Positions 56,504-59,490 of a stretch of DNA of 64,000 bases are shown here, one piece after another; position 1 is the stretch's first letter; every line of letters starts with the position of its first letter. A program made the position numbers and the translations under genes. The notes under the pieces are model-generated. The model did not search any database, had not been told where the DNA came from, and worked only from the letters and a program-made list of their open reading frames with translations. The stretch covers positions 1,426,001 to 1,490,000 of the forward strand of contig CDROCS010000506.1 in NCBI GenBank assembly GCA_977020255.1, in the 5' to 3' direction. The stretch is from Obrimoposthia wandeli (Eukaryota).

Positions 56504-56528
56504 AAGCCCAGTTAAACTGGGCTTTTTT
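56504..56528 (+). terminator. Intrinsic terminator after dapD
   Basis: AAGCCCAG-TTAAA-CTGGGCTT followed by TTTT. Confidence 0.85.
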
Positions 56529-56557
56529 AGCACTAAAAATCAGTGCGAGCAGTAGTG

Positions 56558-56652
56558 TGAGTCGAATAACGCCCTAATCGGCTCACGAAATGAGTTGAAT
56601 AAATCCCTATTCGGCTCATAATATGAGTCGAATAGCTTAATTAATTGACTCA
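56558..56652. repeat. Array of three palindromic units with 33-bp period upstream of fic
   Basis: Units begin at 56558, 56591 and 56624; each has a TGAGTYGAATA arm and an inverted (T)ATTCGGCTCA-like arm. Confidence 0.9.
56595..56622 (+). promoter_or_regulatory. Putative sigma70 promoter of fic embedded in the array
   Basis: TTGAAT (56595-56600)-N16-CATAAT (56617-56622); predicted only. Confidence 0.6.
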
Positions 56653-56665
56653 CGGCGAGGTAAGT

Positions 56666-57772
56666 ATGTGGATATGGGAACAGCAAGAATGGCCAAACTT
56701 TACTTGGCATGAAGCCAGTATCGCGCCTATTTTAAGGCAAGCACACTTTAATCAGGGTTTATTACTGGGTAAAGTCAATGCGCAGAACAATAATGAACAA
56801 CAAGTTGCACTTGATACTCTACTCGCAAATATCGTCTACTCAAGCGCGATTGAAGATGAAAAGCTCAACGCCTTTTCTGTGCGTTCATCGCTAGCCAATA
56901 GATTAGGCATCAGCGAAGACAAACCCTATCCGACATCAGAGAAAACCGATGGTCTTGCCGAGATCATGCTCGATGCTATTACTAATTTAGATGACAAACT
57001 AACCCTTGAACGGATACTGAATTGGCACACGCTGTTATTTCCAGTAGGTTATACCCTATTCAATCCAGTACAAGGTGGTGTATTGCGTGGAGATACACCC
57101 ATGCAAGTCGTATCAGGACGATTAGATCGCCCGACAGTACATTTTGAAGCGCCACCTCGACATGTTCTAGATAATGAATTAACCGCGTTTATCACTTGGT
57201 TTAATCAGTCTAAATCAGATAACACATTAGATCCGTTAATACGCGCTGCAATCACCCACCTATGGTTTGTAACACTCCATCCACTGGATGACGGTAATGG
57301 TCGCATCACACGTTTATTGACAGATTTAGCACTAGCACAAGCAGAAAGCCAATCAATCCGATTCTATGCCATGTCTGTTAGCATTCTAGCGCGACGTAAA
57401 GGTTACTATGAAATATTGGAGCAAACGCAGAAAGGTGAAACAGATATCACCGCTTGGCTTGTTTGGTTTTTTGATACCTTAAACGAAACGCTGCTAACCA
57501 CATTAAATGATATTGACCAAACCGTATTGAAAACCAATTACTGGCTGCACATTGATCAAACGAAGTTAACACCAGAGCAAGCTAAAGTAATTAACCGTTT
57601 ATTAGATGGCGATTTTGATCAAGGCATAAACTCAAGCCAATATCAAAAAGTAGCGAAGGTAAGTAAAGCCACTGCGACTCGACATTTGAACGCTTTAATT
57701 GAACAAGGTTGTTTGACTAAAACCGGTGCAGGCGGGCGTAGCACGCGTTATTTGATTAATTATAAATATTAA
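56666..57772 (+). CDS. Fic-domain protein with DUF4172-like N-terminus and C-terminal HTH
   Basis: MWIWEQQEWPNFTW N-terminus, SSAIED inhibitory-helix-like motif, HPLDDGNGRITR Fic motif, VSKATATRHLNAL HTH; ATG at 56666 behind GAGG. Confidence 0.92.
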   Translation: MWIWEQQEWPNFTWHEASIAPILRQAHFNQGLLLGKVNAQNNNEQQVALDTLLANIVYSSAIEDEKLNAFSVRSSLANRLGISEDKPYPTSEKTDGLAEIMLDAITNLDDKLTLERILNWHTLLFPVGYTLFNPVQGGVLRGDTPMQVVSGRLDRPTVHFEAPPRHVLDNELTAFITWFNQSKSDNTLDPLIRAAITHLWFVTLHPLDDGNGRITRLLTDLALAQAESQSIRFYAMSVSILARRKGYYEILEQTQKGETDITAWLVWFFDTLNETLLTTLNDIDQTVLKTNYWLHIDQTKLTPEQAKVINRLLDGDFDQGINSSQYQKVAKVSKATATRHLNALIEQGCLTKTGAGGRSTRYLINYKY

Positions 57773-57805
57773 ACTATTCGGCTCATAATCTGAGTCGAAT
57801 AGTTT
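57771..57805. repeat. Downstream copy of the fic palindrome
   Basis: AAACTATTCGGCTCA-TAATC-TGAGTCGAATAGTTT; 57774-57802 is 28/29 identical to 56607-56635. Confidence 0.92.
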
Positions 57806-57879
57806 GGTTAATCGCATCACACCAATCCTTATACCGTTTTTACGCGACGACAGTACTACGACGGATTGTCCTCATCTGC

Positions 57880-59332
57880 TTACACAATAAAAGTGGCTAC
57901 TTTGCCGTTTAATTCGCTAGCTTGATGATTGAGTTGTTGCGATTGTTTGAAATAACATTCTGGCAAATTTCATCGGTCACATGTTCATTCTGCAGCAGGG
58001 CAGCAGGAGTTGCAGAGCATCCGAACAATGAGCCATTTTCGAGCTGCTATCCATTAAATTGACGGCTTTGCTGGTCGTCAGTTGCAAGGTTTCAATCGTT
58101 GCTTTAATTTCTTGTGTCGATGAGTGTGTCCGTTGTGATTCACCGCATTCAATGTGCGCATGCTGGTTTAAGCCTCACTTTAGACGCTCGAGACTTCACC
58201 AATCTTTCCGTTGTCAGTTATGTTGCAGAAGCCATTTCGCCGGTATTTGTTTGCACTCGCAATGTGCTCAGTTGATTAATTGCTGGATTAATTGTTGCTG
58301 ACTACCTACAAACAGATTAAAACTATTGGCTAAATGACCTACTTCATCGTTGGCATATATCTCAATGCGTTGGGTAAGATCACCGCCACCTTGCGCAATC
58401 AAAGCCAGCGCATCAGATACACTTCGCAAGGGTTGAAATAACATACCGCACAACAAATTGAATAAAAACGTGCAAACGACGACAACAACAAGCGTGGCAA
58501 TTACTTGGCTCCATATTGCGGCGTACAAAGGGGCGACAGCAGAATTATAATCAACCACCATAATAATAACTAAATCGTTATTCTTAATCGCTTCGGCATA
58601 AATCATGGTGTCTTTGCCGTTAACCATGACTTTTTCAACATGAGGAGCACGTAATGTTTGCTGGATCGCAGCAAAATCTAGACCTAACGACGCAATTTTT
58701 TTATTCAATAGATTAATATCTTGGTGAGCAAAAATAGCACCTTGATTATTACTAATAAGCATATACCCGTCACCAGGCAGTATGACTTGTTCCATATTTT
58801 GCACAATATTTCTAATTTCAACATCCGCGCCAATAACGACAGATTGACCTTGCAGACGATGCTCACTGCCTAATGAGACAACATTCGCCCCTGTCGCCGC
58901 GGCAACCGTGGGATTATCCATAAACACTTTTGAAGGGTCAGCTTTGGCGTTAATGTACCAGCCCCATTTTCGAGGATCATCATTACCTGCTGGCAGCGTG
59001 ATCCCATTTGCATTCTTTTGACTGCCGTCTGGAAATGCGGCGAAGACATTATCAAATTCACCAGATCGCGCCATTTGTTGTAAATGTTTCTCAAGCGTTT
59101 CCGGTGCTATATCATCAGACAACGAACTTAAAATAGTACCTTTAGATGCAATCCAATCCGCTACATATTGATTATATGAAGCTGATGACCCTTTTAACCG
59201 CTCCTCAATTTCAACATCTAAACGTTGCAGTGATGACCAAAAAGATAGGGAGGCCACTAGTATCCCACCGAGTATAATGGCAAGACTCGCCGATAATGCC
59301 AGCTTGTTTTTGAGCGACATGTTCTTAAACAT
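57880..59332 (-). pseudogene. Methyl-accepting chemotaxis protein with intact sensor/HAMP half and fragmented signalling domain
   Basis: TM-dCache-TM-HAMP is open from ATG 59332 to TGA 58268. Downstream only remnants remain: EMASAT, LNQHA, SQRTHSSTQEIKATIETLQ and LNHQASELNGKVATFIV-stop (57880). Confidence 0.85.
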
Positions 59333-59462
59333 AAAATACCTCTGATTGATTAACATAACGCTCCCAAATTCAATCTTGGGCGAGTTAATTCCATGGTGAG
59401 CAAGAATAATTGATATAACATGCGGTTCTGGTTCATGCGCCGTAGACTCGTTTCTCAGAACC

Positions 59463-59490
59463 AAAAAAGCCACTGCAAGTGCAGTGGCTT
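59463..59490 (-). terminator. Intrinsic terminator after ptsG
   Basis: Minus strand AAGCCACTGCACTTGCAGTGGCTTTTTT. Confidence 0.88.

What the first reader, a model, noticed from the sequence alone, without database searches (positions are those of the whole stretch)
56607..57815. fic is bracketed by near-identical 29-bp palindromic direct repeats
Seen: CTATTCGGCTCA-TAATA-TGAGTCGAATAG (56607-56635) recurs as CTATTCGGCTCA-TAATC-TGAGTCGAATAG (57774-57802), 1167 bp away and starting 1 bp after the stop codon. A degenerate arm, AATCGCATCAC, follows. Both copies have the same orientation and the same arm asymmetry. Inference, three options: (a) a downstream operator for DNA looping across the gene; (b) lox/dif-like 12-5-12 sites marking an excisable cassette whose circle would keep the RBS and ORF but lose the -35; (c) a relic of insertion. 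No recombinase is encoded in the window. This is the best candidate here for an undescribed system.
Basis: partly seen in the sequence, partly recalled or inferred. Interest (0 to 1): 0.72.

Follow-up and report, generated by a model that had tools for sequence, protein, structure and literature searches.

The report
Fic gene flanked by own operators
A marine bacterium's Fic (SoFic-type) enzyme gene carries landing sites for its own DNA-binding tail at its promoter and, unusually, again right after its stop codon. The second set is kept by selection, and recombination between the two sets has repeatedly deleted the gene in related species.

Summary
The window is a Moritella contig inside a 1.35-Gb assembly. 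The upstream palindrome belongs to an array of six alternating 12-bp half-sites (56558-56652, 16-17 bp apart) that covers the predicted promoter of a DUF4172-Fic-wHTH gene. This gene matches the SoFic defence model, and its closest solved homologue is CbFic2.

The downstream copy is a 47-bp repeat of the last three half-sites (57774-57819). Arrays of this kind lie upstream of homologues in many genera. Their sequence class changes together with the wHTH helix, so they are the protein's own operators, as published for CccR and SoFic promoters.

New here:
- The 3' array evolves more slowly than synonymous sites, while its spacers vary freely.
- An analogous 3' array arose separately in Scandinavium and is kept in all 12 fic-carrying species examined.
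- The array decays where fic is lost.
- Seven fic-less Moritella species keep hybrid "solo" sites at the same locus.
- A contig from the same sample carries an H1xH5' deletion joint.

The joints differ in register, fic is inherited vertically, the site occurs nowhere else in the genome, and no circle was seen. A lox/dif-like cassette and an insertion relic are therefore not supported. Looping itself was not tested. This is a new variant of a known kind, of moderate interest.

The parts
56504..56530 (+). dapD intrinsic terminator (GCCCAGTTAAACTGGGC followed by a T run). It marks the left edge of the fic module.
   Evidence: Perfect 10-nt inverted repeat (I14). It is conserved in the Moritella genomes that carry fic or a solo site.
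56558..56569 (+). Half-site H1, TGAGTCGAATAA. Left partner of the H1xH5' deletion joint.
   Evidence: The joint 56557->57791 shares 11 letters on both sides.
56574..56585 (-). Half-site H2, CTAATCGGCTCA (inverted orientation).
56591..56602 (+). Half-site H3, TGAGTTGAATAA. Contains the predicted -35 hexamer TTGAAT (56595-56600).
56607..56635 (.). Upstream 29-bp palindrome, H4-TAATA-H5. The predicted -10 hexamer CATAAT (56617-56622) straddles the end of H4 and the spacer.
56641..56652 (-). Half-site H6, TTAATTGACTCA, just before the RBS GAGG (56657-56660).
   Evidence: It is identical in all four fic-carrying genomes.
56666..57772 (+). fic gene, 368 aa: DUF4172, a Fic domain (HPLDDGNGRITR) and a C-terminal winged helix. 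Class II inhibitory helix SSAIED. SoFic-type.
   Evidence: Pfam. PDB 8CIL (CbFic2), E 1.6e-86 over residues 2-365. PADLOC SoFic model, E 1.6e-40.
57774..57802 (.). Downstream 29-bp palindrome, H4'-TAATC-H5'. It starts one base after the stop codon. H5' (57791-57802) is the right partner of the deletion joints.
   Evidence: It forms a -22 kcal/mol RNA hairpin.
57808..57819 (-). Downstream half-site H6', TTAATCGCATCA. It differs from H6 in the same way in all fic-carrying Moritella genomes.

Best explanation
The palindromes are operators bound by the Fic protein's own C-terminal winged-helix domain.

The upstream array of six alternating half-sites covers the predicted sigma-70 promoter: the -35 lies in H3, the -10 at the H4/H5 spacer, and the likely transcription start in H5. 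Bound Fic would therefore shut off its own transcription, as shown experimentally for CccR and, at the level of DNA binding, for SoFic.

The 47-bp downstream copy (H4'-H5'-H6') is a second, old and selectively maintained operator at the 3' end of the gene. Most likely Fic dimers or oligomers bound there cooperate with those at the promoter, by bridging or looping across the 1.17-kb gene. Alternatively they may act as a roadblock or as extra high-affinity docking DNA.

As a by-product, the two arrays are direct repeats. Recombination or slippage between same-orientation half-sites has repeatedly deleted fic, leaving hybrid solo sites.

Shown here: the anatomy, family-wide conservation, co-variation of site and helix, purifying selection, and the deletion alleles. 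Inferred: binding by Fic, repression, and the mode of action of the 3' array.
For: - **Protein identity.** DUF4172-Fic-wHTH architecture. Full-length homology to the DNA-binding enzyme CbFic2, PDB 8CIL. Match to the SoFic defence model.
- **Family-wide arrays.** Half-site arrays sit at about -108, -92, -75, -58, -41 and -24 from the ATG in homologues from many gammaproteobacterial genera.
- **Co-variation with the wHTH helix across 75 loci.** VSKATATRHL goes with TGAG[CT]CGAATA, VSPATASRHL with TGAGGTGAATA, VSKPTASRHL with TGATTTGAATA, and VSRATATRHL with TGAGGCAAATA.
- **Promoter overlap.** TTGAAT-16-CATAAT is predicted at 56595-56622, inside the array.
- **Published precedent.** CccR represses its own promoter through palindromes at -35/-10 (PMC9755527). 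SoFic binds the 100 bp upstream of its start codon (bioRxiv 10.64898/2026.07.09.737422). DNA binding dimerises CbFic2 and switches its activity (PMC10628234).
- **Selection on the Moritella 3' array.** Mean pairwise difference is 0.056 in half-site columns, 0.45 in spacers and 0.319 at fic third codon positions (Mann-Whitney p 2.5e-5, half-sites vs spacers).
- **No gene conversion.** The difference between H6 and H6' is kept in all four genomes.
- **Independent origin in Scandinavium.** Four 3' half-sites, the first overlapping the TGA stop, are kept in 12 of 12 fic-carrying species. Mean pairwise difference is 0.194 in half-sites, 0.67 in spacers and 0.438 at third codon positions (Mann-Whitney p 1.9e-7, half-sites vs spacers). 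On the Fic tree, Scandinavium and Moritella lie in separate major clades (99% support).
- **Decay without fic.** H6' carries 0, 1, 0, 0 mismatches in fic-carrying genomes and 1, 8, 3, 3, 2, 1, 6 in fic-less ones.
- **Deletion products.** Seven fic-less Moritella species have solo sites whose left part is of H1/H2 type and whose right part is of H6' type. The joint 56557->57791 appears in a contig of the same sample and in an unrelated study.
- **Vertical inheritance.** fic nucleotide divergence tracks that of dapD and glnD. Starred branches of the flank tree force at least two changes of fic state.
Against: - No binding, expression or looping data exist for this protein.
- The co-variation of site and helix is confounded by phylogeny.
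- The Moritella comparison has only three to four effectively independent lineages.
- The 3' array was found in only 2 lineages among about 110 family loci scanned, so it is not needed by most family members.
- The palindrome unavoidably forms a stable RNA hairpin at the 3' end of the transcript. That hairpin could itself be the selected feature for H4'-H5'.
- Adjacent half-sites are about 1.5 helical turns apart, and CccR's published operator has a different layout (10-N26-10). The binding geometry is therefore unknown.
- At 1.17 kb, the spacing of the two arrays gives no test of looping.
Confidence: 0.62

Rival explanations
1. The selected function of the downstream palindrome is at the RNA level. 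It would be a 3' hairpin that terminates or stabilises the fic transcript, or stops convergent transcription from the neighbouring gene. Its likeness to the operator would then be historical.
For: The hairpin is stable on the + strand: -22.3 kcal/mol in the window, -19.7 in PE36 and -19.5 in the MAG, with z-scores of -4.5 to -7. The G/A arm asymmetry gives a G-U pair on the sense strand. The MAG L011 has paired changes that keep a perfect stem. The element starts at the stop codon, and in both Moritella and Scandinavium the next gene is convergent.
Against: The terminator scan finds nothing here, and PE36 and the MAG have no U tract after the stem. A hairpin constrains pairing, not sequence, yet the half-site letters are kept. 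H6' lies outside the stem and is still conserved, 12 of 12 letters in three of the four genomes. In fic-less genomes the sites decay.
Confidence: 0.13
2. fic is an excisable and insertable cassette. The flanking palindromes would be lox/dif/attC-like sites for a recombinase encoded elsewhere, and the solo sites would be empty attachment sites.
For: Single-site empty alleles exist at the same locus in seven species. A deletion joint is present in reads. The 3' site abuts the stop codon, as attC sites do. A four-half-site upstream plus three-half-site downstream layout, as in L011, is what crossover within a palindrome spacer would give.
Against: - The joints fall in different registers, and H1xH5' has no palindrome partner to its left.
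- The site occurs only at this locus in three genomes.
- fic divergence matches that of its flanks, so it has not moved recently.
- Sites co-vary with the Fic wHTH helix, not with any recombinase.
- Scandinavium lost fic by deletions that did not use the repeats.
- No 'goes back' circle joint was seen, although contigs are a weak test for that.
Confidence: 0.06
3. The downstream copy is a neutral relic, for example the operator of a lost tandem fic copy or a by-product of insertion, with no present function.
For: It copies H4-H6 in the same order and spacing. Most family members lack it.
Against: Its half-sites change more slowly than synonymous sites while its spacers change at or above that rate. 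The copy predates the species splits. A similar array evolved separately in Scandinavium and is kept in 12 of 12 species. It decays once fic is gone.
Confidence: 0.07

Closest known systems
CccR of Yersinia pseudotuberculosis (Fic-HTH toxin and autorepressor; PMC9755527)
   Same: A class II Fic enzyme with a C-terminal DNA-binding domain. As a dimer it binds palindromic boxes near the -35 and -10 of its own promoter and represses it.
   Different: CccR's operator is two 10-bp boxes separated by 26 bp. Here there is an array of six 12-bp half-sites with 4-5-bp spacers. No 3' operator is described for CccR. By sequence CccR is only a distant relative; if 7CB8 is its structure, the match is E 3e-6, and that assignment is my guess.
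SoFic (Shewanella oneidensis SO_4266) and the SoFic anti-phage defence family
   Same: Same domain order. The PADLOC SoFic model matches at E 1.6e-40. Dimeric SoFic binds the 100 bp upstream of its own start codon (bioRxiv 10.64898/2026.07.09.737422).
   Different: The SoFic binding site is not mapped to sequence, and no 3' site has been reported. E. coli Sofic has a 47-aa downstream antitoxin gene, AS1 (PMC12249575). In Moritella dasanensis the 112-nt gap to the convergent MCP gene leaves no room for such a gene and holds the operator copy instead.
CbFic2 of Coxiella burnetii (PDB 8CIL; PMC10628234)
   Same: The closest solved homologue, E 1.6e-86 over the full length. It binds DNA through the wHTH, and DNA induces dimerisation.
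   Different: CbFic2 was studied only with random DNA, so no specific site is known. It is proposed as a secreted effector acting on histone H3. Nothing here suggests secretion.
Auxiliary operators that loop DNA (lac O2 inside lacZ, gal OI, deo, ara O2) - recalled from general knowledge
   Same: A second copy of the repressor's site, hundreds to about a thousand bp from the promoter operator, kept by selection.
   Different: Here the auxiliary site is an array placed exactly at the 3' end of the repressor's own gene. Oligomerisation of this Fic beyond a dimer has not been shown.

Membership tests
SoFic-type class II Fic (DUF4172-Fic-wHTH) | N-terminal DUF4172 plus a Fic domain | tested here: met
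   Pfam PF13776 at E 3e-27 and PF02661 at E 1.6e-11.
SoFic-type class II Fic (DUF4172-Fic-wHTH) | Fic motif HxFx(D/E)GNGRxxR and inhibitory helix (S/T)xxxE(G/N) | tested here: inconclusive
   The motif reads HPLDDGNGRITR (Leu in place of Phe) and the helix reads SSAIED (Asp in place of Gly/Asn). The catalytic His and the inhibitory Glu are both present. Activity was not tested.
SoFic-type class II Fic (DUF4172-Fic-wHTH) | C-terminal winged helix-turn-helix | tested here: met
   The alignment to 8CIL runs through residue 365. Pfam HTH families hit residues 324-367 weakly, below their cut-offs.
SoFic-type class II Fic (DUF4172-Fic-wHTH) | Match to the defence-system model; protection against phage | tested here: inconclusive
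   PADLOC SoFic model, E 1.6e-40, positions 19-353 of 361. Phage protection cannot be tested with these tools.
CccR-like autorepression | Palindromic sites overlapping the -35 and -10 of the gene's own promoter | tested here: met
   The predicted promoter at 56595-56622 lies inside H3-H5. Binding itself cannot be tested here.
CccR-like autorepression | Operator layout of 10 bp - N26 - 10 bp | tested here: not met
   The layout here is 12-5-12 and 12-4-12 in an array with a 33-bp period.
Site-specific recombination site (lox/dif/attC-like cassette) | One fixed crossover position that gives identical joints | tested here: not met
   The joints are H1xH5' in G006, G007 and the read contigs, and H3xH5' in G004, G008, G009, G011 and G013.
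Site-specific recombination site (lox/dif/attC-like cassette) | The same site at other cassettes or loci, and a cognate recombinase | tested here: not met
   The site occurs only at the fic locus in three Moritella genomes. I did not search systematically for a recombinase.
Site-specific recombination site (lox/dif/attC-like cassette) | A circular excision product | tested here: inconclusive
   No 'goes back' joint was found in four runs, but those runs are stored as contigs, which drop rare forms.
Intrinsic terminator | G+C-rich stem followed by a U tract | tested here: not met
   The scan finds none at 57774-57815. The stem is stable, but PE36 and L011 have no U tract after it.
Dispersed palindromic repeat (REP/MITE) | Many copies across the genome | tested here: not met
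   With up to 2 mismatches, only the fic-locus copies appear in G001, G002 and G003.

The most novel reading that the evidence does not exclude
The operator DNA may act as the antidote of this single-gene toxin or defence enzyme. Docking on the specific half-site arrays would hold Fic as a DNA-bound dimer in its inactive or de-AMPylating state, as DNA does for CbFic2. The extra 3' array would add docking capacity next to the gene. Anything that strips or destroys this DNA, such as phage attack, would release the active AMPylase. Lineages with a 3' array would then use DNA where E. coli Sofic uses the small AS1 protein. The solo sites left after deletion could be what lets cells lose fic safely.
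Probability: 0.1. Interest if true: 0.8.

Novelty: new variant of a known kind. Interest (0 to 1): 0.5.

Why it matters
Fic enzymes with a DNA-binding tail (CccR, SoFic, CbFic2) are under active study as toxins, phage-defence genes and effectors. Their DNA sites are mapped in only one case. This work contributes four things:
- a family-wide, sequence-level operator model: 12-bp half-sites in alternating arrays whose sequence changes with the recognition helix;
- a rare layout in which the gene is enclosed by its own operators, kept by selection in two lineages that acquired it separately;
- a concrete route by which a defence-type gene is lost again and again;
- defined DNA fragments for testing whether specific DNA controls Fic activity as well as fic transcription.

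Tried and rejected
- **Dispersed repeat or regulon.** Rejected: no other copies in three Moritella genomes. Most hits in the 1.35-Gb assembly are no commoner than the reversed control pattern.
- **Integron or dif-type cassette.** Rejected as the main reading because the joints are in variable register, fic is inherited vertically, and the site has a single locus.
- **Gene conversion as the reason the 3' copy stays similar.** Rejected: H6 and H6', and the spacers, stay different between the two copies in every genome.
- **A promoter in the 3' copy.** None found on either strand (and reading the sequence).
- **An AS1-like small antitoxin gene downstream.** In M. dasanensis only 112 nt separate fic from the convergent MCP gene. 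I had no AS1 sequence to compare.
- **Bracket layout in more distant SoFic-family loci.** Not seen in 29 further loci. The one hit, L146, is a single non-palindromic 12-mer and probably chance.
- **Circle detection.** The runs are held only as contigs, so absence means little.
- **Not done.** Structure prediction of the dimer, and a scan of all window genes for a recombinase.

Full report
**What is in the window**

The second starts one base after the TAA stop codon of a 368-aa gene (56666-57772). No match arose in 100 shuffles.

The repeat is really 47 nt long (56607-56653 and 57774-57820, 85% identical) and takes in a third half-site.

The upstream copy is not alone. Six 12-bp half-sites alternate in orientation at 56558, 56574, 56591, 56607, 56624 and 56641. 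They are spaced 16-17 bp apart, which gives a 33-bp period. I call them H1-H6, and the downstream three H4', H5' and H6'.

**Gene and organism**

The protein has DUF4172 and Fic domains and a C-terminal winged helix. It aligns over its full length with CbFic2 of Coxiella burnetii (PDB 8CIL, E 1.6e-86). It also matches the PADLOC model of the SoFic anti-phage system (E 1.6e-40).

The window is a bacterial contig (C506) inside a 1.35-Gb assembly. The gene is 97% identical to that of Moritella dasanensis, 93% to Moritella sp. PE36 and 91% to a Moritella MAG. Its left neighbour is dapD and its right neighbour is a convergent chemoreceptor (MCP) gene.

**The palindromes are the protein's own operators**

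In 80 loci encoding homologues (52-97% identity, many gammaproteobacterial and some betaproteobacterial genera), alternating half-sites sit at the same offsets from the start codon: about -108, -92, -75, -58, -41 and -24.

Their sequence differs by lineage and changes together with the winged-helix recognition region:

| wHTH recognition region | Half-site class |
|---|---|
| VSKATATRHL | TGAG[CT]CGAATA |
| VSPATASRHL | TGAGGTGAATA |
| VSKPTASRHL | TGATTTGAATA |
| VSRATATRHL | TGAGGCAAATA |

This co-variation is confounded by descent, but it is what a protein that recognises its own sites would show.

The predicted promoter, TTGAAT-16-CATAAT at 56595-56622, lies inside H3-H5.

Published work fits this reading:
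- CccR, a Fic-HTH protein, represses its own promoter through palindromes at -35/-10 (PMC9755527).
- Dimeric SoFic binds specifically to the 100 bp before its own start codon (bioRxiv 10.64898/2026.07.09.737422).
- DNA binding dimerises CbFic2 and switches it from AMPylase to de-AMPylase (PMC10628234).

The site occurs nowhere else in three Moritella genomes. It is therefore neither a dispersed repeat nor the mark of a regulon.

**The downstream copy is kept by selection**

All four fic-carrying Moritella genomes have H4'-H5'-H6' directly after the stop codon. H6' (TTAATCGCATCA) differs from H6 (TTAATTGACTCA) in the same way in all of them. The duplication is therefore older than these species, and the two copies are not being homogenised by gene conversion.

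Mean pairwise differences:

| Lineage | 3' half-site columns | Spacer columns | fic third codon positions | Test, half-sites vs spacers |
|---|---|---|---|---|
| Moritella (4 genomes) | 0.056 (36 columns) | 0.45 (10 columns) | 0.319 | Mann-Whitney p 2.5e-5; Fisher p 5.5e-4 |
| Scandinavium (12 genomes) | 0.194 | 0.67 | 0.438 | Mann-Whitney p 1.9e-7 |

Among all other loci scanned (about 75 close homologues and 29 more distant SoFic-family loci), only Scandinavium shows the same layout. There, four half-sites follow the gene and the first overlaps the TGA stop. All 12 fic-carrying Scandinavium species keep them, while the spacers vary freely.

On the Fic protein tree, Moritella and Scandinavium lie in different major clades (99% support). 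The 3' array therefore most likely arose twice.

A purely RNA-level role does not account for these findings:
- the half-site letters themselves are conserved, not just the pairing;
- H6' lies outside the stem and is still conserved;
- PE36 and the MAG have no U tract after the stem.

The stable hairpin (-22 kcal/mol) may still contribute.

**Empty alleles and deletion**

Only 3 of 13 Moritella species genomes carry this fic, while all 13 carry dapD.

- Three genomes show no trace of the module and group together on a glnD/dapD tree (98/99 support).
- The other eleven rows of that tree (ten species genomes plus this window) form the opposite group.
- In that group, seven fic-less species keep 'solo' sites directly after the dapD terminator.
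  - Five have H1, H2, a hybrid H3/H5' and a site of H6' type.
  - Two have a hybrid H1/H5' plus a site of H6' type.
  - In each, the right flank matches that of the fic-carrying relatives.

fic divergence between species tracks that of its flanks:

| Pair | fic nt identity | dapD | glnD |
|---|---|---|---|
| G000 vs G002 | 83% | 88.7% | 83.7% |
| G000 vs G003 | 82% | 79% | 73% |

PE36, which carries fic, is sister to two solo-site species with 100/100 support.

The simplest history is one old acquisition followed by repeated loss through recombination or slippage between same-orientation half-sites of the two arrays.

After the loss the sites decay. H6' carries 0-1 mismatches in fic-carrying genomes and 1-8 in fic-less ones.

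**Evidence from reads**

In public runs, a 964-nt contig from the same sample as the best-matching run joins 56557 to 57791. This is the H1xH5' joint, with 11 letters shared by both sides. Its flanks are identical to the window. The same joint appears in an unrelated study.

The fic-carrying form is present in those samples as well. No circle joint was seen, but these runs are stored as contigs and cannot exclude one.

In Scandinavium, fic was lost by other routes. One species keeps the last ~22 codons plus decayed 3' sites, and another has a clean gap. The repeats are therefore not a dedicated excision device.

**Verdict on the three readings**

- (a) A downstream operator is supported as a selected Fic-binding site. 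Looping is the most conventional mechanism but is untested. A roadblock or extra docking DNA are alternatives.
- (b) The predicted single-site empty allele exists. However, the variable joint registers, the single locus, vertical inheritance and the tie to the wHTH rather than to a recombinase all argue for repeat-mediated deletion.
- (c) An insertion relic does not fit the age of the 3' copy or the selection on it.

**Novelty**

Autoregulation of Fic-HTH proteins at their promoters is already known. The following are new here:
- the array model of the operator;
- the selected 3' array in two separate lineages;
- the recurrent deletion between the arrays.

I rate this a new variant of a known kind, with interest 0.5.

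The most novel reading not excluded is that the specific DNA also controls Fic activity, acting as a DNA 'antidote'. I put its probability at about 0.1.

**Limits**

- There are no binding or expression data.
- The Moritella comparison rests on few independent lineages.
- Read evidence comes from contigs only.
- I did not screen the window for recombinase genes.

Noticed in passing
window 57900-59473 (- strand): The chemoreceptor (MCP) ORF at 58268-59473 is 401 aa, with dCache and HAMP domains only. The M. dasanensis orthologue is 674 aa (L009 5217-7241). Relative to it, the window lacks stretches around 57945-58023. Reads from the same sample also carry the longer form. This may be strain variation, gene decay or an assembly fault.
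   Followed up: partly
L012-L034 (for example L013, L016, L021, L022, L023, L032): A clade of nearly identical fic genes (tree branches under 0.05) is spread over Amphritea, Pseudoalteromonas, Paraglaciecola, Shewanella, Marinomonas, Catenovulum and Yersinia alsatica. Several share the same upstream membrane-protein gene end. This looks like a horizontally mobile fic, and the element that carries it was not identified.
   Followed up: partly
L120:1521-1566 (Scandinavium G014, contig 11): A lone triple half-site (TGAGCCGATTGG / ATTATTCGGCTCA / CGAGCCAAATAA) sits in an intergenic stretch of a prophage lysis region, with no fic beside it. It could be a relic, a phage decoy for the host Fic, or chance.
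   Followed up: partly
L011:3890-3925 compared with window 56558-56590: The Moritella MAG lacks exactly one 33-bp period (H1 and H2) of the upstream array, so the array expands or contracts by whole periods.
   Followed up: no
window 57418: In run X18 the only contig covering fic has a 1-nt gap here and 10 substitutions. This may be a frameshifted fic in a minor strain, or a contig error.
   Followed up: no
whole window: The window is a Moritella chromosome piece (contig C506, at least 1.49 Mb) inside a 1.35-Gb, 6912-contig assembly. It is a bacterial associate or contaminant of a eukaryotic genome project. The source sample appears to hold at least two closely related Moritella strains.
   Followed up: partly
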